NCBI RefSeq assembly: GCF_006345805.1
Contig: NW_021835991.1
Coordinates: forward strand, 434,001-498,000
From: Octopus sinensis
Taxonomy: Eukaryota
Direction of reading: 5' to 3'
DNA: 64,000 nt
In this document: in pieces, positions 41,799-64,000 of the stretch
Layout: each line of letters starts with the position of its first letter
How positions within the stretch are numbered: position 1 is the stretch's first letter
Program-made: the position numbers and the translations under genes
The notes under the pieces: model-generated
The model's database searches: none
Seen by the model: only the letters and a program-made list of their open reading frames with translations
Told to the model about the DNA's origin: nothing

Positions 41799-42049
41799 TT
41801 ACCTTGCAGGATTTCGAGAAAAATATTTTTGTAAGCACTAGGTCTCACGAGTTTGTAAATATCAGCGAGAATCTTTGCTTATAGCGTCTATTAAGGTCAC
41901 TGTTTAGCAGTGTTATTTGATTTAAATCATTTGATTTTAATCAACAAAAAATCAATGATTTGCTGCTGATTAAACCAATTGCTGTCGTTGTAGACAAAAT
42001 GCAAAATGATTTTACGAAGATTAGTCATTTTGTAGAAAACTTGAACAGA

Positions 42050-43110
42050 CTTACATGGATTATGAATGTACGGCTATTTTAGAAAAAATGAAAACCTGAG
42101 CTGATCAAGTATTAACAGATTTCTTACTGGCAAATCTAATGGACCCAGCATGTTTTGAGAAGTCTCTTTCAACTGCAGAGATTGACCTCGCTTTGGAGTA
42201 TTGTCTGAATATTATGAATATGCTCTCCCGAATCTGATTAATTTCAGAGCTGAGCCATTTAAGCAATACAATATTCTAATAAAACTTGATGGTCATTAAT
42301 CATTAGCCACTCACCACTCTGGACGTTGCCTATTCATAAGTACAATTATTTCCATTAAGATGCTCAATTGCAAAATATGAAGATATTAAATTTATAAAGA
42401 ATGAATAAAACTATTAACAAACTTATGATACTTTTATTGAAATGGATAAATTGAAAAACCATCGACTTTGTCAGATTCATTTTTACAAATTGTAAAAAGT
42501 GTCAACCTTTACTCATAGTAGTTCTTTAAAATGTTTTTTCAATAATCGTTTTTCGGGCTCCGTAATTAGAAGTAAAATAATCATTGTTAATACACATATT
42601 GTCATATTTAGAATGTCATTATAATTCATCATTTTGTTAATATAAATTTGTCAATTCTAAATCATCCAGCAAATATGATAAGTGAATATTGTGATCTCCA
42701 TTATGTTGTTTATTAAATAAACATTCTTTCGCTTTTTTAATAAGCAAAAAATCTCCTTTTAAAGAAATCCATACTTGAATAACATTTGACAGTTTGTAGC
42801 ATAATAAGAAACAGATTTGAGTCAGCTCCCTAATCTCGCAGCTATTGGTTCTTGCGGGTACCCAATTTCTTTGAACAATTGTCTTCGATAATTGTTCTTT
42901 ATAGCAAATGCTTGTAAAATTTCCACTATATTGTGGCAAGTAAACTCTGAAGGAGGTGGATGCCCAATAAATTCGAATAAGTGATAAATGCTCTTTTTCT
43001 CAATTTATAGAGTGGAATGTTTTCTGATACAAATGCTTCCGTTACGTCTGACGCAAAATTTCAGAAAAATAATTTTTCAGAACAATAGTCAATTGTCTTG
43101 TATTTGTGGA
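42050..43110 (-). mobile_element. CGGBP1-related hAT-like remnant (second copy)
   Basis: Homologous to 13430-14438; 5' part deleted. Confidence 0.55.
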
Positions 43111-44363
43111 TATTAAATTGTTGCTGATTTAGTTTAAAAAGATATCAACTTGATCTATTTTATCTTAGAAAGTTAAAGTTCAACCTAACTTTATGCAAAA
43201 AAATTTCAGTCAATTCGTTTTAAACTGGATCAACTTCAGCTGACCTCTTTAACTGTCACACAGCTGAGACTGACTCAAAGCTCTCCAAATTCAAGGGACA
43301 AGATTGCTCCTGAACGACAAATATTTATGTATTGGTATTAGTTTACGCATAGGTATGGATATCTACCAGCCCCACACCTGCAGGTAGGGGAGCACAATTT
43401 TTTCGAACGGTTTGCATACCCTATCTTATAGAAAGAGTGCTGGTGAGTATTCCTCGCCACACACAAGTGAATAAGGTCGTTAAATGAGCTGATGCCCAGG
43501 TCGAGTAAAAGAAAAGGATAAAGTAAAAAAGACAATTCTGAAACTTTCGAGTTCGACCCCTTGCTTCCGAAACTTTTGGAATAGTCGACAAGATGATGAC
43601 TCAGCTGCTATCGTTTGGAGGATCGAAGATTTTGTCGAAAACAAATGACCGGAGAGAGACGAACTAGCTTTTCCAGCAAGTCTCGGTGTGCTCGCCGAAA
43701 ATACCATTCCATACGCACTGCGGAGTCAAATAGCTTAGTCTTCGGGCCCCGAAAGACTTTAAAGTGCAGTTGGTTGATTTACTTTCAATTTTTTTAAAGC
43801 TTTATTTTTCGCTACTAAAAAAAACCTAAGTTACTAATCTACTAAATCAATTTAAACAATTTTTAGATAAAGAAACTTTATCGCTTTAAAATGTAAATAC
43901 TGAGTTGAAAAAGTAGTAATCAATTGTCAACAACCGGCAGTCAGTATTGCAGTCGTGATAACTGCAATTTCATTAGTATACCAATTAGTATGCATGGATT
44001 GGAACAAAAATAAAAATGCACAAGAGCACACGAAAAAAAATATGCCGTAGGACAGCCCGACTGGAACCGACCTCACCCGATAGCGATCCAAAGTGCAATG
44101 GATGACTAAAGGATGGAATGCCTGCCTAAGTGATAACAGGCATCCACGACCAGGTAAGTGGATTTTTGAAATGGCACTCTCTAAATGTATTTAAAAAATC
44201 ATTTAAATTATGTTCAATATTTCCACCGGATGAATTATTTTTATTCAATTAGAAAATTAATTTTGAAATAAGTTCTTTTTTAAATTTTAGAAAAAAACCA
44301 TTACAAATTTATTTAATACTTTATTATTTTTATGTTACATAAATATCAAATACGAAACAAACA

Positions 44364-45589
44364 AGTGGACAACTATCTATCCCCGAGTCATAGTGGATTT
44401 AGGACAGGAAGATCCACCGCCGATGCTGTCTGGGCCCACAAGTGGTACTGCGCTATCACCCAGAGATACAAAAGTGCAACAACAGTCCTGGGAATAGACC
44501 TGTCTAGGGCCTTTGACACGGTACGCCGTGGTCTACTCCTCAAAATACTGGAACAATTCCTGGACCCTGACTCTGTCAATATGATAAGAGTACTACTATC
44601 GAACACAAAGCTCAAGGTGCGGGTCGGCACGGCGTTTTCCCGTGAATTCACGTGCAACGTCGGTACCCCTCAGGGAGACGCCCTCTCGCCGTTGCTATTC
44701 GTGATCTATCTGGAGACGGCACTACGAGACCTTCGAAAATTCTATGCTGGCAATATCGTCGAAATTGTATATGCAGATGACGTCGACTTCGTGTCAGACG
44801 ACAAATCGGCCTTACTTCGACTCCTTGAAGTGGCACCTGCTGAGCTGAACAGATGGTTCCTTAAAATGAACGTTGGAAAAACCGACATCGTTGAAATCAT
44901 GAGGATGGAGAGCAGCTCAAGTGAAGCCTGGCGCAAAACGAACAAACTTGGTTCTCTACTTGGGGACGGCCATGATATTGTCAGAAGAAAGGCTCTCGCT
45001 TGGGCCACGATGAACAAGATAAAGAAAGAGTGGATCGGCAAACGACGACTCTGTACGTCACTTCGTCTGAGGATGTATGAAGCCTTTGTCAAACCAATCC
45101 TGACATATAATTCGGCGACCTGGGGAATGTCTAGTACTGAACAACGTGGACTCGATTCTTTTCACCGCAGGCAACTTAGATCCCTACTGGGATTGAACTG
45201 GCCTATAAGAATCAACCAGGAATCGCTATACAATAGATGCAGAACTGGCCCTCTGAGTGTGGAAATCGTCAATATGCGGTGGAGGTTATTTGGCCATATT
45301 CTACGAATGGACATGCTTGCCCCAGCTAACATAGCAATGGAGGGCTACTTCCTGAAAGAGGGATCGAGCTTCCGTGGACGTCCACGTGTTACGCTGCCGG
45401 AAACACTTGACGGAGACCTGAAATGTGTGAAGAAAAGGCTAAGGAGTGGTGAGGATCTGGACGAGCTGAGGAAACTCGCTCACGACAGAGGAGGTTGGAG
45501 GAGGCTGGTTCAAAGGATTGTTTTTAATGCTGCACGAGTAAAATTATAACTAATATGATTCTACGTATGTTGCAAATAATAATAATAAT
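44364..45589 (+). mobile_element. 5'-truncated RTE-clade LINE with intact RT ORF
   Basis: GFRTGRST, IDLSRAFD, GTPQGDALSPLLF, YADD, DRGGWRRLV; (AAT)5 tail; 9-bp TSD AAACAAACA; empty site at ~16700. Confidence 0.95.
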
Positions 45590-45670
45590 AAACAAACAGT
45601 TGATGATATAGAATACAGCTGACCGTTAATGCTACTTTAAAAAACAAAAAGTTTTTTTAGAATGGATATA

Positions 45671-46880
45671 CACTCAACCCTCTCAAATTGGCCATTTTTG
45701 GTTCCTTCAATATTGTTGGCCAATTTGAGAAATGGCCAATTAGCAAATAAAACTAGTGTCTGTGATGGAGACTCGCTAGAGAGAATACTAAATAACTCAC
45801 TTGATAGGTTTGGATAAATTATTCTATATGTATATTTAAATATTTCGAATTATTAGAGATCTTTATAGCTGTGATAACTTTCGTTACGTGAATGTAGATG
45901 CTTTTGCACGTCTAGTCGCATTAACACATCAGTACAAATCTTATTCTAACATTAAAGTTACATGCAATCAAATACCATTTTTATTCGCCAAAAATCAGTC
46001 GTCGCCTCAACCTTAAATATTTTAAATTACTGACTGTGTAGTTTTTTTAAAGACCAGAAAATGTGCATGTTCACAAATGGGTCCTAACCCACAATGTATA
46101 CTTTTTTATTCTCATATAAGAATTACAACAGTGACGAAAAAACTAAATATCTTATTAGCCGACAACAGTGTGAAAATAAAAGTATCTCAAATGCAACCTC
46201 TGTGACCACCCTATCCCAAATAATATAATCTGCACAAGTGAATGTAACTGAAAAAATATTTTGACGGTACTCAATAACTAACCTAATTATTCTGATATTT
46301 CTTGTTTTCACTTTTCTTTATTATTACATTCACTAGTCAGAATTAAATCCAAACTTGCACAATTTTTTATTGATTTAATTAAAAGAAAAACCAAATTTTA
46401 ACAAAAACCAGTCCCAAAATTAGTTACAGATATGTATTTTGATGTCTGGGTCAAATGAAGAATAGTAAATCTCTTTATAAGGATTATTCACCAGTTTAAA
46501 ATCATCCATAATAAAAATAGACTTGATTAATGACATTCTGATTGTTTGTAACAACCTTCACAGTAACCTCACACAACTTGAAAATTGCTTCTTCAAAATG
46601 GATACGCTAAATTTTGAGGATTGCGATCAAACCGAATAACTTTCTTCTTTTTACGGAATAATTCCAGAATCAGAAAGTTTTCTAGAATGTATTATCAATA
46701 ATTTAACTTGTCTGCGAAAATTAATAAAATTAAAATTTATTAAAAAAATTTTGAAAAATAAAAATTATGCTACTAAAAAAATTAAAATTTGTGGCCAATT
46801 TGAAAATTTATTATTTTGTAGAGTTTTTCAATTTTCCAGAAATAAATTGTCAAAAATGGCCAATTTGAGAGGGTTGAGTG
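45671..46880. mobile_element. Non-autonomous Tc1/mariner (pogo-like) element, second copy
   Basis: Same TIRs and TA flanks as 16781-17989. Confidence 0.85.
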
Positions 46881-48228
46881 TAACTTTATTATTAATGCGT
46901 CCACTTTCAGTTGATTTTCCTCTTCCTTGAACCACAACCGATCTCTTTAAAGGTCCCATTCATTTATCTCACAGGGTTTGGTTCTTCTGTGGTCATTCTC
47001 AAGTTTGACTCGATGGCCTCACATGGAAATGCTTTCTCCGTTGATTCATTTGTAAACCGAGACTTTTTCCATTCTTTTAAATTAATGCTCTACACGCATA
47101 GTCTACAAAGTTTTTCATAAATGAATGCAAGCTTGTGTGGGTCCTTCGAGATTGATTGAATAGCAGTGATGTTCATAGAATTTTCACACAACACCGTTTC
47201 ATATTTGTACCAATAATACGTAGTTGCCTTGGCATTGTAGATTACTCTCAGTTCATTAGCAAGCATGTCGAATTTATAAGCTTTTCTGACAAGATTTTCA
47301 TTAAAATGATTTTCTTAACCTTCACTCAATCATATCATATCTTCACCCTAATTCCTGCCATATCCTAACCTCAACCACTTACTAATCCAAACCATATACT
47401 AGTCCTAACCACTTCCAAACTTTACCCCTAATTTTAACCGTAATTCTATCTATTAAGCTGTATTAAAATATCAGAGATTTAACCTCATTTTGTAGTTTAT
47501 TTAACCATACAAATCATTGTAAACATATACATATTTTGTAATTATTAAAAAAGTAAACACAGCATGTTAAAAGTTAAAAAAAAGAATTGTTAGCCCGAAA
47601 TTATTTTACGAGCCTATGTTTAGTTCAGGTGTAATCAGGTCTTGACAGTTGAAATTTATGGCTATTATATATAAATAATGTTTGGGATAATCGAAAAATT
47701 TTATTTGCACGTTTACAAGGTCAAAAAATGTAACAAGCTGCCCATGTCACATGAACACTTGTTTGCGGCTAGATAAATTCGAGTTTATAATTAACATTTT
47801 ATCAAATAATCGTGTCAAAATAAAGCAAGCATTCTTATTTATTAGTTACGCAGGTAAATTAGAGTTTCAAAGTACAATGTAACCGGTTGCCTATCCGTAT
47901 TCGTCTGCCCATATTATATAATAAATTCTTGAAATAACTCAAAGCAGTAAAACATTGAGGGCAGTTTGGTTAAATTAGCTTTTTTATATCAAGAGAACTG
48001 AGTAAGGAATTCTGTAGTATTGCAAAATCGAATTTATACTTAGAATATATTCTTTTTTATTTTTATTCTTCTCAGCATTCTTTGACGAACTATAACATTT
48101 AGTAATTTTTGAGAATGTTAATGATGAGATGTCATTTTTTTGACAATGATTTAAAAATATTAATCACTTGACATTTGTTAAAATCGGGAATTAATTGGCG
48201 AAAATTTGATTTTTCAGATTATCTAGGG

Positions 48229-48674
48229 CAGGATTCGGAAAATACTTTCGGAAAAGTGCCATTTTTGAACATTTTTGGAAATTTCGAAAAATTGAAGAGC
48301 CTTTTTTTACCATTTGTCCAAATCAAAAATTCAAATTCATAAAATTAATTAGACATTCATTTAAAAAAATAAAATTAATTAGACTCATTAATGGAAAATG
48401 TGATTCCTTATTTCTTTGGTGAGTTATCAATTATTAATAAAGAAAAAATTAACAAAAAAAATTAAAAATGAAAGAGCCATTTTTAACCGAAGCTTGAGAT
48501 ACATGCTATTTCGTATGAGCAAAATTTACGACTAAATATGTAAACTTTTAAATAATTTTACAAAAATCATATATAAAAACAAATAAATAGTTATAAAAAT
48601 AATAAAATTGAAAGAGCCTACTTAAGACTTAAAGAGCCAACAAAAGCTTGCGAGCCCACTTTTGCCGACCCCTG
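48229..48674. mobile_element. hAT MITE
   Basis: TIR CAGG(G/A)(G/T)TCGG.AAA / TTTTGCCGACCCCTG, 8-bp TSD ATCTAGGG, repeated AAGAGCC internal motifs. Confidence 0.85.
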
Positions 48675-48742
48675 ATCTAGGGGATTTAATATTTTGTTTT
48701 GGTTGGATTAACGAGACAAGCGAATGTTAATAAAAGTTAATA

Positions 48743-50094
48743 TTAGTCGGCCAATTGGCAAAATAGAGCTGCCCCTCGCTGTATCCAGTGACTGTCCTTT
48801 TGGTCAGTGGGAAGGTTGACTGCCACAATAAAGTTAGTAGAATGACCTATCGTTCTAGAATAAATATAAACCAGTAGTTGAGAGGACTCCTGACCTCTGC
48901 GTGGTTTTATAGAGAGGGGCTATGTAATCGTGGCTTGGAGGAGTGAAATTCTGTGTGGGTAAGACGTGGATGACAGGCATAATGGAGGACATTTCCCTGT
49001 AGTTCATCTCGTCCATTTGACCCTGGTCACTCCATCGGAAGCCTTGGGTGTAAAGTCCGTGAATGAGAGCGCCGTCTTCAATGTCTTGAATCTATGGAGT
49101 AGTGACTAAGACTAACTTGAGTATCGACTGACAATGGTTGGCCAAATTTGCGAGTCCTGATCTCTTCTGCGAGGTTTGATTGGTGGATGTATTGGGGAAG
49201 AGGTTGGAAACTAAAGGAAAGAGTGTCAATGGGGAGTTGATATTTGCGGGAATAGTTCTGTAACACGGCAGTGAGGAAGCTTGATAGAGTGAGTTGTGTC
49301 AACCTTGGGGGAAGAACAAGGCAGGTATCCAAAAAAATTTAGGAGTGCCATTTTTAATCCAAAAATTGAAGAATTCACATCGCATTGTAAGATCGAGAAT
49401 CCAGGAAGAGAGAGAGTGAAGGGAAGGGTAAGCGACCCTCTCCCATATTGAGGGGACCTGTTTCATGAAGGACTGATAATTGCCTGGTTTTTCAATAGAG
49501 AATTGTAGCACATTTCCAAGTCTTCAGTGAGGACTTGGAATCCTTGGATTGCTCTCTGCAAGTGATTGAGGGACTTCTGAAAATGATGAGATCATCAGAC
49601 CTGAATAGTTTCCAGCAGATAAGCCATTTTTTCTATTTCTTGTGATAAGAAAATAGCGAGGGAATTGCTCTTGGTCTATTGGATGAGTGGATTGGTCAAC
49701 CAATGTGTATTCTGCTAGTTTTAGGGGCAATTGTTGTTGAATTGAGTTGATTAATTCCTCTACGATCTCGTCACTAGTTTGCCCAGTTCCTTTGACCGCG
49801 ATGTGTGGTTTAATGTTCCTGATGGTCTCTAGCAAGTCAGAGGATTGTGACAACTATCGACTGAGGGTGAAAACATACTTGGAATGATATATTTGCATTT
49901 TCGTGCATCCCGAATATATTAGGTGAATCTTGCAAAGGCAGTCCGTCTAGAAAATGTTTGTTCTCTTTAAAAATAGGGTCATATTGCCCATTAATGTTCG
50001 TATCTTCGAGAATTTGTTGGTTGATAAATCGGTCGAGAATAACTCCCAGACAGCGCAGATCCCATTGATCAGTGACTCTCCCCCCATAAGTAAT
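48743..50094 (-). pseudogene. DNAH6: Detached duplicate of the dynein heavy chain 3' exons
   Basis: ITYGGRVTDQWDLRCL through ALFCQLAD*. Begins at a retained acceptor (CACTAG); one acceptor is altered CAG to CAA at 49281. Confidence 0.85.
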
Positions 50095-50098
50095 CTAG

Positions 50099-50854
50099 TG
50101 TCCTCCGTGCAGTGTCCGGATCCTCCTTCGGTCAAGACTAAGAAACGCTAAGAATAATCTACAAATAATATGTCAGGACCTCCCTTAACTACGCTAGCCC
50201 CGCTTGGGGCTCTTCTCTTTCATCCAGTAACAATCAAAAACTTCAAAGGATTCAAAATGGTGCTCTCTAAACAATTACTAGATGCATGCTATTCACTCCT
50301 TCCGACCATCTCCAATGGGAAACCACCATTCTCCCTGTGGAAGATCACCTTCGCATGCGGAACCTGCAATTCCTCAGTACAGCCATGAATCAGACTACCT
50401 ATGTCATTTCCTCTCTCATACAAAAAACAGCCGTATGATAGTACCTACCATTGCAAATCTAACCAGTGAACTGTCTAAAATTTCTGAGCCTTCCTCCGAG
50501 AAATCGAGGACAAAGCAGATACACGACCATGTCTCCATTAAGACTATTCGAAAACTTGCCTGGAATAAATTACTAGACGACTCCTTTCCTCTGGTGAACG
50601 ACTCGGAGTCTTAGCTGGACAGAGAAACGAGAACATCTTTGGCACAACTTCGTTCTGGACATTTCCTCCTAATTGATGAATCTGGCTATTAGTCTCATCA
50701 TCCGGGCCATCTATGCCTATTGCTTCGAGAAGCTTTCTCCGGACCGGGCCTCCGGTGGGCATTATAGACTTATGGAAGCGCCCAGCACTCGCTGCTGAGT
50801 GTCTAAGGACAGCCGGCCTCCTACAAGCTAGAGAGGTCGGAGTAACTAACTAAC
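50099..50854 (+). mobile_element. 3' fragment of the I/Jockey-group LINE (third copy)
   Basis: Near-identical to 41043-41798; (TAAC)3 tail. Confidence 0.8.
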
Positions 50855-51109
50855 TTACCTTGCAGGATTTCGAGAAAAATATTTTTGTAAGCACTAGGTC
50901 TCACGAGTTTGTAAATATCAGCGAGAATCTTTGCTTATAGCGTCTATTAAGGTCACTGTTTAGCAGTGTTATTTGATTTAAATCATTTGATTTTAATCAA
51001 CAAAAAATCAATGATTTGCTGCTGATTAAACCAATTGCTGTCGTTGTAGACAAAATGCAAAATGATTTTACGAAGATTAGTCATTTTGTAGAAAACTTGA
51101 ACAGACTTA

Positions 51110-52170
51110 CATGGATTATGAATGTACGGCTATTTTAGAAAAAATGAAAACCTGAGCTGACCAAGTATTAACAGATTTCTTACTGGCAAATCTAATGGAC
51201 CCAGCATGTTTTGAGAAGTCTCTTTCAACTGCAGAGATTGACCTCGCTTTGGAGTATTGTCTGAATATTATGAATATGCTCTCCCGAATCTGATTAATTT
51301 CAGAGCTGAGCCATTTAAGCAATACAATATTTTAATAAAAGTTGATGGTCATTAATCATTAGCCACTCACCACTCTGGACGTTGCCTATTCATAAGTACA
51401 ATTATTTCCATTAAGATGCTCAATTGCAAAATATGAAGATATTAAATTTATAAAGAATGAATAAAACTATTAACAAACTTATGATACTTTTATTGAAATG
51501 GATAAATTGAAAAACCATCGACTTTGTCAGATTCATTTTTACAAATTGTAAAAAGTGTCAACCTTTACTCATAGTAGTTCTTTAAAATGTTTTTTCAATA
51601 ATCGTTTTTCGGGCTCCGTAATTAGAAGTAAAATAATCATTGTTAATACACATATTGTCATATTTAGAATGTCATTATAATTCATCATTTTGTTAATATA
51701 AAATTTGTCAATTCTAAATCATCCAGCAAATATGATAAGTGAATATTGTGATCTCCATTATGTTGTTTATTAAATAAACATTCTTTCGCTTTTTTAATAA
51801 GCAAAAAATCTCCTTTTAAAGAAATCCATACTTGAATAACATTTGACAGTTTGTAGCATAATAAGAAACAGATTTGAGTCAGCTCCCTAATCTCGCAGCT
51901 ATTGGTTCTTGCGGGTACCCAATTTCTTTGAACAATTGTCTTCGATAATTGTTCTTTATAGCAAATGCTTGTAAAATTTCCACTATATTGTGGCAAGTAA
52001 ACTCTGAAGGAGGTGGATGCCCAATAAATTCGAATAAGTGATAAATGCTCTTTTTCTCAATTTATAGAGTGGAATGTTTTCTGATACAAATGCTTCCGTT
52101 ACGTCTGACGCAAAATTTCAGAAAAATAATTTTTCAGAACAATAGTCAATTGTCTTGTATTTGTGGATAT
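51110..52170 (-). mobile_element. CGGBP1-related hAT-like remnant (third copy)
   Basis: Near-identical to 42050-43110. Confidence 0.55.
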
Positions 52171-53418
52171 TAAATTGTTGCTGATTTAGTTTAAAAAGAT
52201 ATCAACTTGATCTATTTTATCTTAGAAAGTTAAAGTTCAACCTAACTTTATGCAAAAAAAATTTCAGTCAATTCGTTTTAAACTGGATCAACTTCAGCTG
52301 ACCTCTTTAACTGTCACACAGCTGAGACTGACTCAAAGCTCTCCAAATTCAAGGGACAAGATTGCTCCTGAACGACAAATATTTATGTATTGGTATTAGT
52401 TTACGCATAGGTATGGATATCTACCAGCCCCACACCTGCAGGTAGGGGAGCACAATTTTTTCGAACGGTTTGCATACCCTATCTTATAGAAAGAGTGCTG
52501 GTGAGTATTCCTCGCCACACACAAGTGAATAAGGTCGTTAAATGAGCTGATGCCCAGGTCGAGTAAAAGAAAAGGATAAAGTAAAAAAGACAATTCTGAA
52601 ACTTTCGAGTTCGACCCCTTGCTTCCGAAACTTTTGGAATAGTCGACAAGATGATGACTCAGCTGCTATCGTTTGGAGGATCGAAGATTTTGTCGAAAAC
52701 AAATGACCGGAGAGAGACGAACTAGCTTTTCCAGCAAGTCTCGGTGTGCTCGCCGAAAATACCATTCCATACGCACTGCGGAGTCAAATAGCTTAGTCTT
52801 CGGGCCCGAAAGACTTTAAAGTGCAGTTGGTTGATTTACTTTCAATTTTTTTAAAGCTTTATTTTTCGCTACTAAAAAATCCTAAGTTACTAATCTACTA
52901 AATCAATTTAAACAATTTTTAGATAAAGAAACTTTATCGCTTTAAAATGTAAATACTGAGTTGAAAAAGTAGTAATCAATTGTCAACAACCGGCAGTCAG
53001 TATTGCAGTCGTGATAACTGCAATTTCATTAGTATACCAATTAGTATGCATGGATTGGAACAAAAATAAAAATGCACAAGAGCACACGAAAAAAATATGC
53101 CGTAGGACAGCCCGACTGGAACCGACCTCACCCGATAGCGATCCAAAGTGCAATGGATGACTAAAGGATGGAATGCCTGCCTAAGTGATAACAGGCATCC
53201 ACGACCAGGTAAGTGGATTTTTGAAATGGCACTCTCTAAATGTATTTAAAAAATCATTTAAATTATGTTCAATATTTCCACCGGATGAATTATTTTTATT
53301 CAATTAGAAAATTAATTTTGAAATAAGTTCTTTTTTAAATTTTAGAAAAAAACCATTACAAATTTATTTAATACTTTATTATTTTTATGTTACATAAATA
53401 TCAAATACGAAACAAACA

Positions 53419-54647
53419 AGTGGACAACTATCTATCCCCGAGTCATAGTGGATTTAGGACAGGAAGATCCACCGCCGATGCTGTCTGGGCCCACAAGTGG
53501 TACTGCGCTATCACCCAGAGATACAAAAGTGCAACAACAGTCCTGGGAATAGACCTGTCTAGGGCCTTTGACACGGTACGCCGTGGTCTACTCCTCAAAA
53601 TACTGGAACAATTCCTGGACCCTGACTCTGTCAATATGATAAGAGTACTACTATCGAACACAAAGCTCAAGGTGCGGGTCGGCACGGCGTTTTCCCGTGA
53701 ATTCACGTGCAACGTCGGTACCCCTCAGGGAGACGCCCTCTCGCCGTTGCTATTCGTGATCTATCTGGAGACGGCACTACGAGACCTTCGAAAATTCTAT
53801 GCTGGCAATATCGTCGAAATTGTATATGCAGATGACGTCGACTTCGTGTCAGACGACAAATCGGCCTTACTTCGACTCCTTGAAGTGGCACCTGCTGAGC
53901 TGAACAGATGGTTCCTTAAAATGAACGTTGGAAAAACCGACATCGTTGAAATCATGAGGATGGAGAGCAGCTCAAGTGAAGCCTGGCGCAAAACGAACAA
54001 ACTTGGTTCTCTACTTGGGGACGGCCATGATATTGTCAGAAGAAAGGCTCTCGCTTGGGCCACGATGAACAAGATAAAGAAAGAGTGGATCGGCAAACGA
54101 CGACTCTGTACGTCACTTCGTCTGAGGATGTATGAAGCCTTTGTCAAACCAATCCTGACATATAATTCGGCGACCTGGGGAATGTCTAGTACTGAACAAC
54201 GTGGACTCGATTCTTTTCACCGCAGGCAACTTAGATCCCTACTGGGATTGAACTGGCCTATAAGAATCAACCAGGAATCGCTATACAATAGATGCAGAAC
54301 TGGCCCTCTGAGTGTGGAAATCGTCAATATGCGGTGGAGGTTATTTGGCCATATTCTACGAATGGACATGCTTGCCCCAGCTAACATAGCAATGGAGGGC
54401 TACTTCCTGAAAGAGGGATCGAGCTTCCGTGGACGTCCACGTGTTACGCTGCCGGAAACACTTGACGGAGACCTGAAATGTGTGAAGAAAAGGCTAAGGA
54501 GTGGTGAGGATCTGGACGAGCTGAGGAAACTCGCTCACGACAGAGGAGGTTGGAGGAGGCTGGTTCAAAGGATTGTTTTTAATGCTGCACGAGTAAAATT
54601 ATAACTAATATGATTCTACGTATGTTGCAAATAATAATAATAATAAT
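53419..54647 (+). mobile_element. 5'-truncated RTE-clade LINE, duplicate
   Basis: Same ORF translation as 44364-45589; same TSD; (AAT)6 tail. Confidence 0.95.
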
Positions 54648-54729
54648 AAACAAACAGTTGATGATATAGAATACAGCTGACCGTTAATGCTACTTTAAAA
54701 AAACAAAAAGTTTTTTTAGAATGGATATA

Positions 54730-55935
54730 CACTCAACCCTCTCAAATTGGCCATTTTTGGTTCCTTCAATATTGTTGGCCAATTTGAGAAATGGCCAATT
54801 AGCAAATAAAACTAGTGTCTGTGATGGAGACTCGCTAGAGAGAATACTAAATAACTCACTTGATAGGTTTGGATAAATTATTCTATATGTATATTTAAAT
54901 ATTTCGAATTATTAGAGATCTTTATAGCTGTGATAACCTTCGTTACGTGAATGTAGATGCTTTTGCACGTCTAGTCGCATTAACACATCAGTACAAATCT
55001 TATTCTAACATTAAAGTTACATGCAATCAAATACCATTTTTATTCGCCAAAAATCAGTCGTCGCCTCAACCTTAAATATTTTAAATTACTGACTGTGTAG
55101 TTTTTTAAAGACCAGAAAATGTGCATGTTCACAAATGGGTCCTAACCCACAATGTATACTTTTTATTCTCATATAAGAATTACAACAGTGACGAAAAAAC
55201 TAAATATCTTATTAGCCGACAACAGTGTGAAAATAAAAGTATCTCAAATGCAACCTCTGTGACCACCCTATCCCAAATAATATAATCTGCACAAGTGAAT
55301 GTAACTGAAAAAATATTTTGACGGTACTCAATAACTAACCTAATTATTCTGATATTTCTTGTTTCCACTTTTCTTTATTATTACATTCACTAGTCAGAAT
55401 TAAATCCAAACTTGCACAATTTTTTATTGATTTAATTAAAAGAAAAACCAAATTTTAACAAAAACCAGTCCCAAAATTAGTTACAGATATGTATTTTGAT
55501 GTCTGGGTCAAATGAAGAATAGTAAATCTCTTTATAAGGATTATTCACCAGTTTAAAATCATCCATAATAAAAATAGACTTGATTAATGACATTCTGATT
55601 GTTTGTAACAACCTTCACAGTAACCTCACACAACTTGAAAATTGCTTCTTCAAAATGGATACGCTAAATTTTGAGGATTGCGATCAAACCGAATAACTTT
55701 CTTCTTTTTACGGAATAATTCCAGAATCAGAAAGTTTTCTAGAATGTATTATCAATAATTTAACTTGTCTGCGAAAATTAATAAAATTAAATTTATTAAA
55801 AAATTTTGAAAAATAAAAATTATGCTACTAAAAAAATTAAAATTTGTGGCCAATTTGAAAATTTATTATTTTGTAGAGTTTTTCAATTTTCCAGAAATAA
55901 ATTGTCAAAAATGGCCAATTTGAGAGGGTTGAGTG
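54730..55935. mobile_element. Non-autonomous Tc1/mariner (pogo-like) element, third copy
   Basis: Same TIRs and TA flanks. Confidence 0.85.
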
Positions 55936-57283
55936 TAACTTTATTATTAATGCGTCCACTTTCAGTTGATTTTCCTCTTCCTTGAACCACAACCGATCTC
56001 TTTAAAGGTCCCATTCATTTATCTCACAGGGTTTGGTTCTTCTGTGGTCATTCTCAAGTTTGACTCGATGGCCTCACATGGAAATGCTTTCTCCGTTGAT
56101 TCATTTGTAAACCGAGACTTTTTCCATTCTTTTAAATTAATGCTCTACACGCATAGTCTACAAAGTTTTTCATAAATGAATGCAAGCTTGTGTGGGTCCT
56201 TCGAGATTGATTGAATAGCAGTGATGTTCATAGAATTTTCACACAACACCGTTTCATATTTGTACCAATAATACGTAGTTGCCTTGGCATTGTAGATTAC
56301 TCTCAGTTCATTAGCAAGCATGTCGAATTTATAAGCTTTTCTGACAAGATTTTCATTAAAATGATTTTCTTAACCTTCACTCAATCATATCATATCTTCA
56401 CCCTAATTCCTGCCATATCCTAACCTCAACCACTTACTAATCCAAACCATATACTAGTCCTAACCACTTCCAAACTTTACCCCTAATTTTAACCGTAATT
56501 CTATCTATTAAGCTGTATTAAAATATCAGAGATTTAACCTCATTTTGTAGTTTATTTAACCATACAAATCAGTGTAAACATATACATATTTTGTAATTAT
56601 TAAAAAAGTAAACACAACATGATAAGAAAATTAAAAAAAAGAATTGTTAGCCCGAAATTATTTTACGAGCCTATGTTTAGTTCAGGTGTAATCAGGTCTT
56701 GACAGTTGAAATTTATGGCTATTATATATAAATAATGTTTGGGATAATCGAAAAATTTTATTTGCACGTTAACAAGGTCAAAAAATGTAACAAGCTGCCC
56801 ATGTCACATGAACACTTGTTTGCGGCTAGATAAATTCGAGTTTATAATTAACATTTTATCAAATAATCGTGTCAAATAAAGCAAGCATTCTTATTTATTA
56901 GTTACGCAGGTAAATTAGAGTTTCAAAGTACAATGTAACCGGTTGCCTATCCGTATTCGTCTGCCCATATTATTAAATAAATTCTTGAAATAACTCAAAG
57001 CAGTAAAACATTGAGGGCAGTTTGGTTAAATTAGCTTTTTTATATCAAGAGAACTGAGTAAGGAATTCTGTAGTATTGCAAATCGAATTTATACTTAGAA
57101 TATATTCTTTTTTATTTTTATTCTTCTCAGCATTCTTTGACGAACTATAACATTTAGTAATTTTTGAGAATGTTAATGATGAGATGTCATTTTTTTGACA
57201 ATGATTTAACAATATTAATCACTTGACATTTGTTAAAATCGGGAATTAATTGGCGAAAATTTGATTTTTCAGATTATCTAGGG

Positions 57284-57720
57284 CAGGGGTCGGAAAATTC
57301 TTTTGGAGAAGTGCCAATTTTGAACATTTTTGGAAATTTCGAAAAATTGAAGAGTTTTTTTACCACTTGTCAAAATAAAAAAATTCAAATTCATAAAATT
57401 AATTAGACATTCATTTAAAAAAATATAATTAGTTAGACTCATTTATGTGAAATGTGATTCCTTATTTCTTTGATGAGTTATTAATAAAGAAAAAATTAAC
57501 AAAAAAATTAAAAATGAAAGAGCCATTTTTAACCGAAGCTTGAGATACATGCTATTTCGTATGAGCAAAATTTACGACTAAATATGTAAACTTTTAAATA
57601 ATTTTACAAAAATCATATATAAAAACAAATAAATAGTTATAAAAATAATAAAATTGAAAGAGCCTACTTAAGACTTAAAGAGCCAACAAAAGCTTGCGAG
57701 CCCACTTTTGCCGACCCCTG
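57284..57720. mobile_element. hAT MITE, duplicate
   Basis: TIR CAGGGGTCGG.AAA / TTTTGCCGACCCCTG; TSD ATCTAGGG at 57276-57283 and 57721-57728. Confidence 0.9.
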
Positions 57721-57788
57721 ATCTAGGGGATTTAATATTTTGTTTTGGTTGGATTAACGAGACAAGCGAATGTTAATAAAAGTTAATA

Positions 57789-60700
57789 TTAGTCGGCCAA
57801 TTGGCAAAATAGAGCTGCCCCTCGCTGTATCCAGTGACTGTCCTTTTGGTCAGTGGGAAGGTTGACTGCCACAATAAAGTTAGTAGAATGACCTATCGTT
57901 CTAGAATAAATATAAACCAGTAGTTGAGAGGACTCCTGACCTCTGCGTGGTTTTATAGAGAGGGGCTATGTAATCGTGGCTTGGAGGAGTGAAATTCTGT
58001 GTGGGTAAGACGTGGATGACAGGCATAATGGAGGACATTTCCCTGTAGTTCATCTCGTCCATTTGACCCTGGTCACTCCATCGGAAGCCTTGGGTGTAAA
58101 GTCCGTGAATGAGAGCGCCGTCTTCAATGTCTTGAATCTATGGAGTAGTGACTAAGACTAACTTGAGTATCGACTGACAATGGTTGGCCAAATTTGCGAG
58201 TCCTGATCTCTTCTGCGAGGTTTGATTGGTGGATGTATTGGGGAAGAGGTTGGAAACTAAAGGAAAGAGTGTCAATGGGGAGTTGATATTTGCGGGAATA
58301 GTTCTGTAACACGGCAGTGAGGAAGCCTGATAGAGTGAGTTGTGTCAACCTTGGGGGAAGAACAAGGCAGGTATCCAAAAAGATTTAGGAGTGCCATTTT
58401 TAATCCAAAAATTGAAGAATTCACATCGCATTGTAAGATCGAGAATCCAGGAGGAGAGAGAGTGAAGGGAAGGGTAAGCGACCCTCTCCCATATTGAGGG
58501 GACCTGTTTCATGAAGAACTGATAATTGCCTGATTTTTCAATAAAGAATTGTAGCACATTTCCAAGTCTTCAGTGAGGACTTGGAATCCTTGGATTGCTC
58601 TCTGCAAGTGATTGAGGGACTTCTGCAAATGATGAGATGATCAGACCTGAATAGTTTCCAGCAGATAGGTCATTTTTTCTATTTCTTGTGATAAGAAAAT
58701 GGCGAGGGAATTGCTCTTGGTCTATTGGATGAGTGGATTGGTCAACCAATGTGTATTTTGCTAGTTTTAGGGGCAATTGTTGTTGAATTGAGTTGATTAA
58801 TTCCTTTACGATCTCGTCACTAGTTTGCCCAGTTCCTTTGACCGCGATGTGTGGTTTAATGTTCCTGATGGTCTCTAGCAAGTCAGAGGATTGTGACAAC
58901 TATCGACTGAGAGTGAAAACATACTTGGAATGATATATTTGCATTTTCGTGCATCCCGAATATATTAGGTGAATCTTGCAAAGGCAGTCCGTCTAGAAAA
59001 TGTTTGTTCTCTTAAAAATCAGTGATCTCTCTCCCCCCATAAGTAATCTAGTGATGAATACACGTGACTACCTCTCTGTTTATGTAATTGAGGGAGTGCC
59101 AGGGAATAGTCCCGCCACTGCATAAGAACGTAGCGTTAAGAAGAGAACATTCGCGGTCAGAATCGGTGAACTCGTACTATTTGTAAAGTAACAATAATCT
59201 TACCATTATATTCCATCCCAGTGGCCCGTATTTCTTCCGCTCTAATACGACCGCGTGAAACAGACTCAGACTATAGACCAGTTTTCTCCACGTAAGCTCT
59301 CCAATACCTCCTTCTTTCTCCTCGAAATATTCCTCGCCTAATTCCCGGAATGACCTCTCCACGTTTGCCCGAATTCCCTTTGGAGCCTCATTCGTCACTT
59401 TGACACAATTCTGGAGGACTGTCACGGGGAAAAATGAGGCTGGCATGGAGGAAAGGAATAGTCGGAACGAGTCATTTACACCTTCGGGGTTTTCTTGAAT
59501 ATTCAGGACAATCTGCTCCAGGCGGGCCATCCACGATTTTGCCAAATGACAATTTTGCAGAAAAACCCAACTCCCATCCTTCAAGGCTGTTTCGATATAC
59601 TTTTCTGCCACAGGTCCCTGTCCTTGTCCCAAAGACAAAAAGAGACACCTACCATTTTAATGAGGAGGTGGAGACCTGTCCTGCATTTCATGTTCAACGC
59701 TCAGCTTTTGAATGGCCCCGAATGGGTCTGAGCCAGTGCTGAGTACCAAGAGGAGAGGAGTCGTTTTGGAGGTGTGTTGATAAACCGAGGACATGTCGAG
59801 TGGCCTGGTTTGGATGTACTCGTGTCCCAAGTTGTCTCTGATTAAGTTGGAAATCGCGTGAGTCAGCTAAATCAGTCGGCTGAAAATAGATTACTTGATC
59901 ACGTCGGCAGACTTTTACGAGCAGGATTTTTTGGAAAGGTGTAACGGACTCCACATGGAATTCATCAAGTTGATTGTCTGTCAAGAATATCTGCCATCGA
60001 GAATAAAATAGACCTTTGAGTCCCCACTGGTCACATATGCACGTGTTTGTGCAAAGCAATTGGCGAGATCCTCGGAAATGATCGACTCAATGTCTCCTCG
60101 AATGAACAAATCGAGTTCGTGGGATGTGAGGTCATTGCGGGCAAGCATTATTTCGACGCATAACAGAAAAGAAAAAACAAGTTTATGTTTCTCAAACAGT
60201 CCCCTGACTTTAAGGACTAAGGAATACCGAGAAACGTGCAAATAGGCGTCGATGGATATTGCTTGGACAAGACAGTCCAGTCTGGTGTCCCCCGACTCGA
60301 CACAGTCCAGAATGGATTGGGAGAAAATCTATTTGTGGTTAATGAAAGCATTTGAAGCCTGTTTGAAGTATTGGAGGGAGAACTGGTACATTGGGTCTAC
60401 TTTGGCCATGTCCGCGATGACAAAATACAGAATTGCGCCTCGCTCAGCAACACTTATGTAAACGTCCCGTGCCCGAGTAATCTCTTTTTCGGTTATTTCC
60501 GTCTGGGCAAGACGAGAGGAGATTTGGCTGAATTTGGCCTGAGTAAGAAAATTGAACAACTTTGGATTCGTTGAGAGCAGTGATGAGTTGAGTATTATCG
60601 AGGACATTTCCTTCTGAGTCGTACAAAAGGACGAGGACTCGGTCGATGATTGCCTTAAGTTGATTTCTGTCATTGTTTATTTGAAGGATCAATTCATTCC

Positions 60701-63700
60701 GGTCTTGTTCTAGTTTTGGCTTCTCAAGTTGGACGACATGACTATCATTTATCATTGTTCTCTTGCCTCAGCAGTTGATCTTGGAGTCCCCCCAGTGTGA
60801 CTGTAAAATTGATTACTGTCACTCGTGTGAATATGTTGGGCTGGTAAACGGGATTGTTCAATTTTGTGGTCATGTAAAGTCGGAAATGAGGGTCGTATTC
60901 CACATCTCGGTCCCCCAGTGTGATCACCCCGTCCTATCAATTAAATTTATCGCTCACTCTCTTCTCGAGGACTGAGTAAAGAAGAGGGTCCACTGACTCT
61001 CCCACATCCTCGATCAACAAAGGCACCCCAATTCGAATTGCGTTCTCTAATGTCCTCGCAAAATGCTTGTCCGTCATTTTAATAACTTTAAGGTCATTGG
61101 CAGCCTCCATGCTTCTTATCCACGTGTTGGCCTGTTCTTAAAACAAAGAAGGAGACCTGTCCTTGTGGGTCAATCATGAGTGGCCATCGTTTCCCTTTGG
61201 TGGCGAGGAGTGCGTTCTGAATGGAGACTTGATTGTTGGGAAGTTTGTTGGACGTCCAGTGGCGCACTTGATAGGGTGAGGCAAATATTTGTATTATGTC
61301 ATAGTCCTCTGATATTGGTATTCCCTCTCTACGCGCATACTTGACCCATTTCAATATTAGTCTTTCTCGGTAACCAACACTGAATGCACCCACATACGTC
61401 ACCCAAGCAGAACACACCATTACATCCCAACGAGGTCCTCAATCTTTTTTTCCAGTGTCTAAAATTTGACGTTCTCTACCAAACTTTTATTTCGGCCTCC
61501 CAGATTTCTTTCTCGTCGCCCAGAGCCTCCATTAGCTTAGAAGCGCGTCTCAGTCGACCGGTCGTGGTTGAAATCTGTTTTTCCAAATTTCTCTTTTCAA
61601 GGACACTGGCCTCATAGGCATTTTGTAATTCGCTGATTTGTTGTTGGACGTTGCTGAGTTGGGTCTGCTTGGTGTGGAGAACCGTCATGACTTGCTTCAA
61701 GTCTTTTTCGGCCACAGCAAGTCTTGTGTGTTTCAACTAATGTACCTTTCCTTTTTGGGCCGGACAGTTTTGTTTACTTGGGCAAACAAATAAATAGCCC
61801 TAACCCACATGCATAAAGATTTACAGGCCTAAACCATAAAAAGTGACTTTACTTTGACACTTTTTCAATCACTTGAGGAGTAAAGTTCTCATTCTCGATG
61901 TATTTCTTGAGTTTCCGAAGCACTGAATCGTTTATGTTCTCTTTATCGTAGTCGTATAGTTTTCTGATCAAGTTAGTGTCCGACAGCAGTTGCTTTGCGG
62001 ACGCCCAGTCGGTTCTAAATCAAAGATTCGAAAAGACTTTAAGTGAAAGAGGACACACACAGCTTCCATGACAGTCTGCACTAATTCGGGTGGGGTTTTG
62101 AATACTCTGATTTCTGCAATGTCACTTTTATCGAGTGCGTCGAGGGACTATTTCTCATCATAACAAATTACTTTAATGGCAGCCTCCAGTTCAGGCAGAG
62201 CCTCCTTCAGGTCACGCTGAGCATCCTCCGCAATGGCCTTGGTTTCTTCCGCCTTTACTTTCACCACAGCCTCGTCCTCTAGCACCAGTTTCCGTGTCTA
62301 AGCGTTACTTTCAGATCCTCACAATATCTGCTTTGTCCTGGTCTTCCGACAACTTTTCCATTAACTTTTCAGTTTCCTTTGACTTTTCTTTAAGCACAGG
62401 CTCCAGTTGATGGAGTTGTTTTTCCATTGAAATGACGATTTGGTTAGTTTCTATCAGTTTGGCCAACCCGTTTTTAATCTTTTGATGTTCCCGAGAGAGG
62501 TCCCTTGAAATAATAAAATGCAATTACTCTTTGGTCGTGCTAAGCATAGATGTAAACAAGTTGAGTAATTCGATATAACTGACTGGATTGAGGCAATAAT
62601 GTCTTCCCATTTCTTCCTCAAATTTGACTGACATTTTGTGGACACTGCGATGCACTCGAATGCAGCAATCACACAATTTTCCCTAGACTGTGCTTATTAA
62701 CACAACCATTAAATTTTCGTCTTTCAATTCTATTTTACTGATAAATGAGTGAGCCACTGAGTGCAGTCCCTCATCTTTCCATTCTTCAAACCAGTCAATA
62801 ATGCAGCAGTTCACCAAAGATGGAAACATCCTGTAAACAGTCCGAAATTCAGACGCACTCAGTGTAATGACAACGTGCAGATTCCGCCTGAGTAGTGACT
62901 ATCACATTACTACCGCACACGATCGATGAACGACTCATAGACCGCCTCACGACTGTCAGTCAATCCCTCAGATTGACAGCTCATTATAATTTGTTCCACA
63001 TCCTCGTCCTCAAATAAGTCGGGCACATGGCCGGAATTCAGAATGTCGTTTATTTCTTGAAGAAAGTCTTTAATTTGATTATCTGCGAGCAGAAAGACGA
63101 CATTCCGGTCATCAATTCCCGCTATTTTGTAAAGTTTTTTGACGTCTTCTCTAAAGGCGTTGGAGTCGTATTTGGGGGTGACTTTGATCTCAAAGCACTC
63201 ATATTCGTAAATTTGTGCGGCCAGTCTGAAATGACTAATCAGTTTGACCTGGTGAAACATTTCTTGCCCGTTCCCCCAACTCCCACGAGGAGTCCATTCC
63301 CCCGTTCTTGGCGAATTATGCGGGCGATTCGTGAAACATGCTGAATGGCGTCTTCAAACAAGATCAAGTCACTTTGATACTGACAGTAGAGAGAACTCTC
63401 GTTAACCTCAGTGAGCATTCTTCTCAGCTTGTTTTTGTCCATTTCCTCGTACTTTCCCCTGTTCATCAAATCACCGTAAATTGGAGGGTTGGTCATGAAA
63501 GACTACAAATGACTGAGCCAAACACTTCGTAAGTGGAAGAGGTCTGTCGCAAAATAGTTTGAAACAAATTTTGGTCAGTTTGATCGATGAGGCGGTCTTG
63601 AAATGCCCTGGTGATTTCATGATAGAAAAGTTTGTAAAGTGATTGGTCGTCGAAGATGGTCTTGACTTGCATGATTCCTGAAACACGTGCACACTCTTAC

Positions 63701-64000
63701 CTTGGAAACATCTTGCCAAGTCTCTCAGATTGAACGAGTAGTGACACTTGGAGGGGGTCGGGAGCAATTCGTTCTGCATTCTCTGGTAAATTTCGACGGA
63801 GGCCAAAATCACCGAGTCGACTGCCAGTCTGACTTGGTGGGGAAATTCCATAACTTGCAAAATGTTCTGAAGTATACTCATCCAGACCACCTGGAAAATA
63901 TGTTTGAGGTTGTGATCTGAGGGAGGGGGGACATTAAGGATGGAAAAATGCCGAGTGAAGCGATTGGTCATGCACCCTTGAGGTCCACAGGCGGCCATCA
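57789..64000 (-). CDS. DNAH6: Axonemal inner-arm dynein heavy chain (DNAH6-like), 3' part from AAA3 to the C-terminus; disrupted at ~59010-59030
   Basis: [82 protein letters not shown]; about 32 introns of 22-30 nt. In-frame TAA at 59012-59014 and apparent 1-nt shortfalls near 61427 and 61853. Orthology assigned from recalled DNAH6 motifs. Confidence 0.9.

What the first reader, a model, noticed from the sequence alone, without database searches (positions are those of the whole stretch)
48743..59071. Dynein 3' end duplicated with complementary lesions; possible rescue through a 9-kb intron
The copy attached to the gene has a 95-bp deletion, a 3-bp insertion and a 1-bp loss (net -93), turning ITYGGRVTDQWDLRCL... 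into [11 protein letters not shown]. The detached copy lies downstream in transcription direction, keeps this exon intact, and begins 6 nt inside the preceding 24-nt intron, so its acceptor (CACTAG, exon start 50094) is preserved. Its own lesion is a later acceptor change at 49281 (all seen). Splicing donor 59071 to acceptor 50095 would skip the dead exons as one ~9-kb intron in a genome of 25-nt introns. Full rescue also needs 49281 to be a sequencing error or to be bypassed; otherwise the locus is decaying (inference).
Basis: partly seen in the sequence, partly recalled or inferred. Interest (0 to 1): 0.75.

Follow-up and report, generated by a model that had tools for sequence, protein, structure and literature searches.

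The report
Partly duplicated, broken dynein gene end
A 9-kb stretch was copied in tandem and carried along the last eight exons of a cilia-motor (dynein) gene; both copies now carry disabling damage, so this is ordinary gene decay, not a rescue by a giant intron.

Summary
A 9,056-bp direct tandem duplication (41043-50098 and 50099-59051, 99.2% identical) has one breakpoint inside a 24-nt intron of a DNAH6-like axonemal dynein gene on the minus strand. That leaves a detached copy of the last eight exons 7.7 kb downstream of the gene's stop codon.

- **Attached copy:** a 3-bp insertion, a 95-bp deletion and a 1-bp loss give [11 protein letters not shown] followed by TAA.
- **Detached copy:** this exon is intact, but a later intron ends AA instead of AG. 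It also has Ser>Phe at a residue that is Ser in all 14 aligned relatives.

The rescue idea is not supported:
- The native 24-nt intron and all seven downstream introns of the attached copy are intact.
- All 30 introns of the gene are 22-32 nt long.
- The distal path is itself frameshifted.
- A further -1 frameshift lies upstream at 61428-61426.

Both rearrangement junctions show 2-bp microhomology, and the lesion lies 20-40 nt from the duplication boundary. This suggests one replication-based event made both (inference).

One-base homopolymer indels look like long-read consensus errors; the large lesions do not. No transcripts or reads could be examined. The finding is an ordinary example of a known kind and of low interest.

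The parts
57789..64000 (-). DNAH6-like axonemal dynein heavy chain gene. This is its 3' ~1,820 codons (AAA3 lid to C-terminus); the gene runs off the window at 64000. It has 31 exons and 30 introns in the window, and the stop codon TAA is at 57791-57789.
   Evidence: The curated model gives one collinear BLASTP match to the 4,150-aa homologue P0139, residues about 2200-4150, at 44.8% identity. Pfam finds AAA_8, MT, AAA_9, Dynein_heavy, AAA_lid_11 and Dynein_C in order. The best named hits are DNAH6-like.
41043..50098 (.). Tandem duplication unit, copy A. It lies downstream in the gene's direction of transcription.
   Evidence: Self-BLAST gives 99.17% identity to copy B. The boundaries were read.
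50099..59051 (.). Tandem duplication unit, copy B. It is contiguous with the rest of the dynein gene.
50095..50100 (-). The new junction. CACTAG is the remnant of the 24-nt intron; its first two bases (CA) are microhomology with 41044-41043.
   Evidence: The sequence was read directly.
59048..59071 (-). The native 24-nt intron (GTAGTCACGTGTATTCATCACTAG). It is intact and contains the duplication breakpoint.
58925..59047 (-). The damaged proximal exon. It has +3 bp (59028-59026), a 95-bp deletion (between 59018 and 59017) and AAA>AA, with a premature TAA at 59014-59012. The lesion falls in the AAA6 lid (AAA_lid_11, about profile position 67 onward).
49879..50094 (-). The intact distal copy of that exon (72 codons). 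It includes the conserved ITYGGRVTDQWDLRCL motif; the 95 bases 50067-49973 are the ones missing from the proximal copy.
48743..50094 (-). The detached 3' gene fragment. It holds eight exons, seven introns and 392 codons, ending in the stop codon TAA (48745-48743).
   Evidence: Pfam finds Dynein_C at E=5e-95.
49281..49303 (-). The distal intron whose acceptor is AA instead of AG (lesion at 49281). Using the AG 1 nt downstream would shift the frame.
49336..49336 (-). A derived Ser>Phe change (TCT>TTT) in the distal copy, at the motif PK-S-FW, which is Ser in all 14 aligned homologues.
   Evidence: Alignment with 14 homologues printed out of 40 aligned; the base difference is listed.
61426..61428 (-). 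A -1 frameshift in the unduplicated upstream part. GTT GGG(G) GAT has lost one G, so the protein reads ...[11 protein letters not shown] / [15 protein letters not shown]....
   Evidence: (the region is collinear with P0139, P0145 and P0147). It may be a homopolymer consensus error.
48455..49280 (.). An 826-bp block with no difference between the two copies. It is flanked by blocks that differ by 2-3%. The pattern fits gene conversion or mosaic allelic divergence.
44332..45549 (+). A reverse-transcriptase ORF of 405 aa (LINE-like) inside the duplicated unit. An identical copy lies at 53387-54604, on the strand opposite the dynein gene.
   Evidence: Pfam RVT_1 at E=4e-28.

Best explanation
**What it is.** This is a real 9-kb tandem segmental duplication. 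One breakpoint fell inside a 24-nt intron of a DNAH6-like axonemal dynein gene. It left a promoterless, intron-containing copy of the last eight exons, which is a duplicated pseudogene fragment, 7.7 kb beyond the gene's own stop codon. On this haplotype the parent gene is also disabled: a complex 95-bp deletion plus 3-bp insertion in the first duplicated exon creates an immediate TAA.

**How it probably arose (inferred).** The deletion and the duplication are most likely two template switches of one replication-based repair event of the FoSTeS/MMBIR type. Each junction has 2-bp microhomology, and the two lie within about 50 nt of each other in homologous coordinates. That would explain why the 'attached' copy is the damaged one without invoking any selection or rescue.

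**What happened since.** The fragment has decayed further (acceptor AG>AA, Ser>Phe). Parts of the two copies have been homogenised, or they differ as alleles do.

**What the transcripts should do (inferred).** They splice the native mini-introns, meet the premature stop and end at the proximal 3' end. No full-length dynein can be made from this sequence by any simple splicing path.

**Shown:** the anatomy, the lesions, the microhomologies, the intron sizes and the patchy divergence.
**Inferred:** the single-event origin, the absence of long-range splicing and the loss of function.
For: - The duplication is a direct tandem, and its junction shares only 2 bp (CA) between the joined sequences. 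An overlap-based assembler could not create that join without reads spanning it.
- The deletion junction has 2-bp AT microhomology, and the 3-bp insertion extends an AG repeat.
- The lesion cluster at 59011-59028 lies 20-40 nt from the unit boundary at 59047-59052. An independent deletion would land that close in roughly 1% of placements within a 9-kb unit (my calculation).
- The distal fragment keeps all seven introns, lacks everything upstream, and no other dynein piece exists in the window.
- The distal copy carries a derived Ser>Phe and an AA acceptor.
- The proximal path has intact GT/GC-AG sites at all 30 introns, which are 22-32 nt long.
- TAA is a genuine stop codon here. No in-frame stop occurs in 1,819 other codons, and the ORF ends exactly where the homologues end.
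- Divergence between the copies is patchy: about 0.3%, about 3%, 0% and about 2% along the unit.
- Where the older copy at 16686-19051 can serve as outgroup, both copies carry derived changes.
Against: - No reads or transcripts could be examined, so heterozygosity, an assembly artefact and rare long-range splicing all remain untested.
- Apart from the two lesions, the 1,820-codon reading frame is clean and conserved (44.8% identity to a full-length homologue). That argues that the gene was functional until recently, or that it is still intact on another haplotype or in the real genome.
- All 14 one-base indels between the two copies sit in homopolymers, some only 3-4 bases long. This shows the consensus is not fully reliable, at least for 1-bp events.
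- The single-event model is an inference from proximity and microhomology only. The 2% divergence next to the junction would then need a diverged template (the other allele) or elapsed time.
Confidence: 0.7

Rival explanations
1. Assembly or haplotype artefact. The real genome would have one unit, and the two 'copies' would be the two alleles laid end to end. A milder version is that the duplication is real but the 95-bp deletion, the AA acceptor or both are consensus or allelic artefacts, so that an intact gene exists.
For: The assembly shows a long-read error signature. In 41043-47500, 1-bp homopolymer indels are about as numerous as substitutions between the copies. Patchy divergence of 0-3% looks like allelic mosaicism. 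The rest of the gene is clean.
Against: The joined ends share only 2 bp, so no overlap could have produced the join; it needs real or chimeric reads. A chimeric read would not be expected to link two points 9 kb apart in direct orientation. A 95-bp deletion with a 3-bp insertion, and a G>A substitution, are not typical consensus errors. Even on this reading each 'allele' carries its own disabling change. The window contains no N.
Confidence: 0.15
2. The donor at 59071 would splice to the acceptor at 50095 across about 9 kb, skip the proximal 3' exons and use the detached copy as the working 3' end.
For: The AG and the intact first exon are preserved in the distal copy. The exon is phase 0, so the join would be in frame. 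The remaining distal introns keep their GT/GC-AG ends.
Against: - The native acceptor 24 nt from the donor is intact and is transcribed about 9 kb earlier. Seven further intact introns, the normal stop codon and the 3' end would all have to be ignored.
- None of the 30 introns exceeds 32 nt.
- In animals with such ultrashort introns, the presumed branch-site A residues track the distance from the 5' end (PMC13644364). Here 18 of the 24 intron bases are replaced.
- The distal path is frameshifted at 49281, and the copy carries Ser>Phe at a position that is Ser in all 14 aligned homologues.
- The upstream frameshift at 61426 would remain.
Confidence: 0.02
3. The proximal gene would still yield a usable protein without the distal copy. 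This could happen by skipping the damaged exon (123 nt, phase 0 at both ends), by using the in-frame AG at 59012-59011, or as a C-terminally truncated motor.
For: Skipping the exon keeps the reading frame, and so does using the AAGAG| acceptor 36 nt into the exon (my reading). Seven intact exons follow.
Against: Either route deletes 43-72 residues of the AAA6 lid, including the ITYGGRVTD-WD motif that is conserved in almost every aligned homologue. The native AG comes first. A truncation would remove the whole Dynein_C domain. The frameshift at 61426 is upstream of all of this.
Confidence: 0.05

Closest known systems
Partial tandem gene duplication that leaves a non-processed (duplicated) pseudogene fragment
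   Same: The duplication is direct and tandem. One breakpoint lies inside a gene. The fragment keeps its introns, lacks a promoter and the 5' exons, and has accumulated a splice-site mutation and a missense change.
   Different: Normally the parent gene stays intact after a tandem duplication. Here the parent copy carries a disabling deletion only 20-40 nt from the duplication boundary.
Complex rearrangements by replication template switching (FoSTeS/MMBIR), or microhomology-mediated end joining
   Same: Both junctions have 2-bp microhomology. A small insertion lies next to a deletion. Two rearrangement points sit within tens of bases of each other.
   Different: Only two switches are inferred, and there is no inverted or triplicated segment. 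The mechanism cannot be shown from one sequence.
Axonemal inner-arm dynein heavy chain DNAH6
   Same: The domain order from the AAA3 lid to the C-terminal domain is the same. The protein is 45-50% identical to animal DNAH6-like proteins and collinear with them to the last residue.
   Different: It is about 130-150 residues shorter than its orthologues across this span. The reading frame is broken at two places on the proximal path.
Alternative 3' exon cassettes that arose by tandem exon duplication
   Same: Two similar sets of 3' exons lie in tandem, downstream of one shared donor.
   Different: The two sets are 9 kb apart, with a LINE reverse-transcriptase ORF in between. Each set has its own stop codon. 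Neither gives an open frame, and the genome's introns are about 24 nt.

Membership tests
Axonemal dynein heavy chain (DNAH6 type) | Motor domain order AAA4 - stalk/MTBD - AAA5 - AAA6 - lid - C-terminal domain | tested here: met
   Pfam finds AAA_8, MT, AAA_9, Dynein_heavy and AAA_lid_11, and AAA_lid_11 plus Dynein_C in the 3' exons.
Axonemal dynein heavy chain (DNAH6 type) | Closest similarity is to DNAH6 and not to other heavy chains | tested here: met
   The top named hits are 'dynein axonemal heavy chain 6(-like)' from frog, elephant, tunicate and horseshoe crab, plus fluke dyneins, at 46-50% identity. The test runs in one direction only; no tree was built.
Axonemal dynein heavy chain (DNAH6 type) | Uninterrupted reading frame (a functional member) | tested here: not met
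   There is a -1 frameshift at 61428-61426 and a premature TAA at 59014-59012. The first may be a consensus error.
Duplicated (non-processed) pseudogene fragment from tandem segmental duplication | Direct tandem copies with a definable junction | tested here: met
   The unit is 9,056 bp at 99.2% identity, and the junction has CA microhomology.
Duplicated (non-processed) pseudogene fragment from tandem segmental duplication | Introns retained; 5' exons and promoter absent | tested here: met
   Seven introns are retained. There is no other dynein-like sequence upstream of 50094 in the unit. An in-frame TAG immediately precedes the exon.
Duplicated (non-processed) pseudogene fragment from tandem segmental duplication | Disabling or derived mutations in the fragment | tested here: met
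   The acceptor at 49281 is AA instead of AG, and Ser>Phe is derived at a position that is Ser in all 14 aligned homologues.
Functional long intron / alternative 3' exon cassette | The downstream cassette gives an open reading frame with working splice sites | tested here: not met
   The distal intron 49303-49281 ends AA. The neighbouring AG shifts the frame.
Functional long intron / alternative 3' exon cassette | The genome or gene uses long introns | tested here: not met
   All 30 introns are 22-32 nt, median 24.5. Only this one gene could be surveyed.
Functional long intron / alternative 3' exon cassette | Transcripts carry the 59072|50094 junction | not testable with these tools
   No same-species sequence was found in the protein collections or the contig index. 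No read data are available.
FoSTeS/MMBIR-type complex rearrangement | Microhomology at each junction | tested here: met
   The duplication junction has CA and the 95-bp deletion junction has AT.
FoSTeS/MMBIR-type complex rearrangement | Both junctions arose in one event | not testable with these tools
   This is inferred only from the 20-40 nt proximity. It needs population or sister-species data.

The most novel reading that the evidence does not exclude
The detached, intact exon would be used. Either rare read-through transcripts splice 59072 to 50094 across about 9 kb, in an animal whose introns are about 24 nt, or the detached copy serves as a gene-conversion donor that repairs the attached copy. 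In both cases 49281 and 61426 would have to be consensus errors. The locus would then be a working dynein gene with by far the longest intron in such a genome.
Probability: 0.02. Interest if true: 0.65.

Novelty: new member of a known kind. Interest (0 to 1): 0.15.

Why it matters
As it stands the finding matters little. It is a clean, base-resolved example of a partial tandem gene duplication in a repeat-rich region, with the parent gene knocked out close to the breakpoint. It has three modest uses.
1. It is a caution for annotating this genome, because the dynein model will be truncated or mis-joined here.
2. It is a candidate case of a duplication and a nearby deletion arising from a single template-switching event.
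3. If the host is a ciliated dicyemid, it hints that one inner-arm dynein may be dispensable or polymorphic for a null allele.

Only if transcripts did splice across 9 kb would it bear on how ultrashort-intron spliceosomes define introns.

Tried and rejected
1. **Ab initio gene models.** Dynamic-programming splice models without homology, and with lenient penalties, threaded spurious introns or read through real ones. I replaced them with a curated model checked against the full-length homologue P0139.
2. **Same-species evidence.** I searched with a 526-aa chimeric query, a 139-aa query centred on the exon, and an exact look-up of the reverse-transcriptase ORF. The best protein hits were only 46-50% identical and the look-up found nothing. 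No transcript or second assembly could therefore be consulted.
3. **Ciliate code.** Reading TAA as Gln would turn the net -93 change into an in-frame deletion. I rejected this because the ORF ends at TAA exactly where the homologues end, and there is no other in-frame stop in 1,819 codons.
4. **Cryptic splicing around the proximal TAA.** The damaged exon contains no GT. Of the downstream AGs, one (at 59012-59011) is in frame but lies behind the native AG.
5. **Pop-out recombination between the two copies.** Any single crossover keeps either the deletion or the AA acceptor. Only a conversion patch could restore the gene (reasoning from the order of the lesions).
6. **A third dynein copy in the older duplication.** That copy (1512-19051) ends about 0.8 kb short of the dynein stop codon and runs into a satellite.
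7. **Polarising the four amino-acid differences.** Only Ser/Phe could be polarised. The other three sites vary among the outgroups.
8. **Rfam scan of the window.** It found nothing.


Full report
**The observation.**
A self-comparison of the window shows that 41043-49974 matches 50099-59019 in direct orientation at 99.17% identity over 8,941 bp. Reading both ends extends the unit to 41043-50098 (copy A) and 50099-59051 (copy B), so the unit is 9,056 bp.

On the minus strand the new junction reads ...gcacggagga[CA]CTAG|ATTACT.... The CA is shared by the two parental sequences, 41044-41043 and 59053-59052. Only CACTAG of the 24-nt intron 59071-59048 therefore precedes the detached exon at 50094.

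The attached exon (59047-58925) differs from the detached one (50094-49879) in three ways:
- a 3-bp insertion that extends an AG repeat (59028-59026);
- loss of the 95 bases that correspond to 50067-49973, a junction with 2-bp AT microhomology;
- AAA>AA.

It therefore reads [11 protein letters not shown] then TAA (59014-59012), against ITYGGRVTDQWDLRCLGVILDRF... in the detached copy. The detached copy's fifth intron (49303-49281) ends AA where the attached copy has AG (58327).

**The gene.**
The minus strand from 64000 down to 57792 encodes the C-terminal ~1,820 residues of an axonemal dynein heavy chain.
- The best named relatives are DNAH6-like proteins of animals at 46-50% identity.
- A no-index search returned full-length homologues.
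- My curated model has 31 exons and 30 introns. It aligns as one collinear match with P0139 (4,150 aa, residues about 2200-4150) at 44.8% identity.
- Pfam finds AAA_8, MT, AAA_9, Dynein_heavy, AAA_lid_11 and Dynein_C in order.
- The 30 introns are 22-32 nt long (median 24.5); 27 are GT-AG and 3 are GC-AG.
- The genetic code is standard. No in-frame stop occurs apart from the lesion, and the ORF ends at TAA exactly where the homologues end.

**The likely host.**
Among 51 surveyed animal genomes, only the dicyemid Dicyema japonicum and myxobolid myxozoans have introns this short (PMC13644364). The D. japonicum genome is 49% repeats with many LINEs, and the animal is ciliated (PMC6736024). From my own knowledge, myxozoans lack cilia. 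A dicyemid is therefore the likelier source, but this is an inference. No same-species sequence was found in any collection.

**Further lesions and data quality.**
- **Distal Ser>Phe.** The detached copy has TTT (Phe) where the attached copy and all 14 aligned homologues have Ser, in the motif PK-S-FW.
- **Upstream frameshift.** In the unduplicated part, GTT GGG(G) GAT has lost one G at 61428-61426. The protein is otherwise collinear residue for residue with three homologues across this point, and no arrangement of mini-introns avoids the frameshift.
- **Consensus quality.** All 14 one-base indels between the two copies lie in homopolymers, some only 3-4 bases long. In 41043-47500 such indels are about as numerous as substitutions. 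That is the signature of long-read consensus error.
- **What this means for the lesions.** The 61426 frameshift and the 1-bp A loss are unreliable. The 95-bp deletion, the 3-bp insertion and the G>A acceptor change are not errors of that type.

**Why the 9-kb intron is unlikely.**
- The donor at 59071 still faces its own intact acceptor 24 nt away.
- Only one proximal exon is damaged. The other seven exons, their seven introns, the stop codon and the 3' flank are intact.
- Using the distal acceptor would mean ignoring all of these and reading through 7.7 kb that holds an antisense LINE reverse-transcriptase ORF.
- The proposed intron of 8,977 nt is about 370 times the median intron of this gene.
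- In ultrashort-intron animals the presumed branch-site A residues track the distance from the 5' splice site (PMC13644364). Here 18 of the 24 intron bases upstream of the distal AG have been replaced.
- The distal path then fails at the AA acceptor, because the nearest AG is 1 nt downstream and shifts the frame.
- Other escapes are no better. Skipping the damaged exon, or using an in-frame AG 36 nt into it, would delete 43-72 residues that include the highly conserved ITYGGRVTD-WD motif.
- A single crossover between the copies always retains one of the two lesions.

**Best explanation.**
The join between sequences that share only 2 bp cannot come from an overlap-based assembly step. I therefore take the duplication as real.

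The lesion cluster lies 20-40 nt from the unit boundary. An independent deletion would land that close in roughly 1% of placements in a 9-kb unit. Both rearrangement junctions also have 2-bp microhomology.

I infer one replication-based event with two template switches: a forward jump of 95 nt, then a backward jump of 9 kb that landed just upstream of the first. That would produce a damaged attached copy and an intact detached copy by mechanism alone.

Divergence between the copies is patchy: about 0.3% over 41043-47500, about 3% over 47500-48454, none over 48455-49280, and about 2% over 49281-50075. Where the older copy can serve as outgroup, both copies carry derived changes. This fits either later gene conversion or a diverged allele used as the template.

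On this haplotype the gene is a recent pseudogene. Whether an intact allele exists cannot be told without reads.

**Context.**
The locus sits in a repeat-rich region.
- An older direct duplication, 1512-19051 against 27649-47925, is 91-99% identical in its main blocks (down to 81% in short divergent ones).
- The two older copies are separated by 93-95-bp satellite arrays and a PIF1-like helicase ORF.
- That older copy stops about 0.8 kb short of the dynein stop codon.
- The window holds no third dynein fragment.

**Verdict.**
The rescue interpretation is not supported. The finding is an ordinary partial gene duplication with decay, of low interest unless transcripts prove otherwise.

Noticed in passing
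window 61426-61428 (minus strand): There is a -1 frameshift (GGGG>GGG) in an otherwise perfectly collinear dynein exon, outside the finding's coordinates. It is either a second disabling mutation or a homopolymer consensus error.
   Followed up: yes
window 41043-59051 (differences between the two copies): All 14 one-base indels between the two 9-kb copies lie in homopolymer runs, some only 3-4 bases long. In the low-divergence part they are about as numerous as substitutions. This suggests a long-read assembly with residual indel errors, so single-base frameshifts in this window should be distrusted.
   Followed up: yes
window 1512-19051 vs 27649-47925: An older, larger direct segmental duplication of about 18-20 kb, 91-99% identical in its main blocks and broken by several indels. 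One of these is an 878-bp segment (40401-41279) present only in the second copy, and it contains the breakpoint of the younger duplication.
   Followed up: partly
window 19119-19747 and 21358-27422: A satellite with a 93-95-bp period, in 6.7 and 63.8 copies, with a 286-bp higher-order period. The short array is inverted relative to the long one, and the two arrays lie between the copies of the older duplication.
   Followed up: partly
window 19842-20546 (minus strand): A 234-aa ORF with a PIF1-like helicase domain (Pfam E=8e-16) lies between the two satellite arrays. It may be a Helitron-type element remnant.
   Followed up: no
window 44332-45549 and 53387-54604 (plus strand): Two identical 405-aa reverse-transcriptase ORFs (RVT_1), one in each copy of the 9-kb unit. 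The segment 44363-45574 is absent from the older copy near 16700, so it is an insertion or deletion that post-dates the older duplication.
   Followed up: partly
window 60766-60742, 60358-60329, 58529-58504 (and 49483-49458): Three of the 30 dynein introns appear to be GC-AG (10%), which is high for an animal gene. This could be a trait of the genome or early donor decay. The 60358 intron is the least certain of the three.
   Followed up: no
window 57792-63998 (minus strand): The dynein is about 130-150 residues shorter than its closest full-length homologue over the same span. There is one gap of about 70 residues near 60013-59895 and smaller ones in the C-terminal domain. This is consistent with a reduced parasite genome.
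   Followed up: partly
window 47517-47573: Six derived changes in copy A cluster within 57 bp, against both copy B and the older copy. This suggests a short conversion tract from a diverged source or a complex mutation.
   Followed up: no
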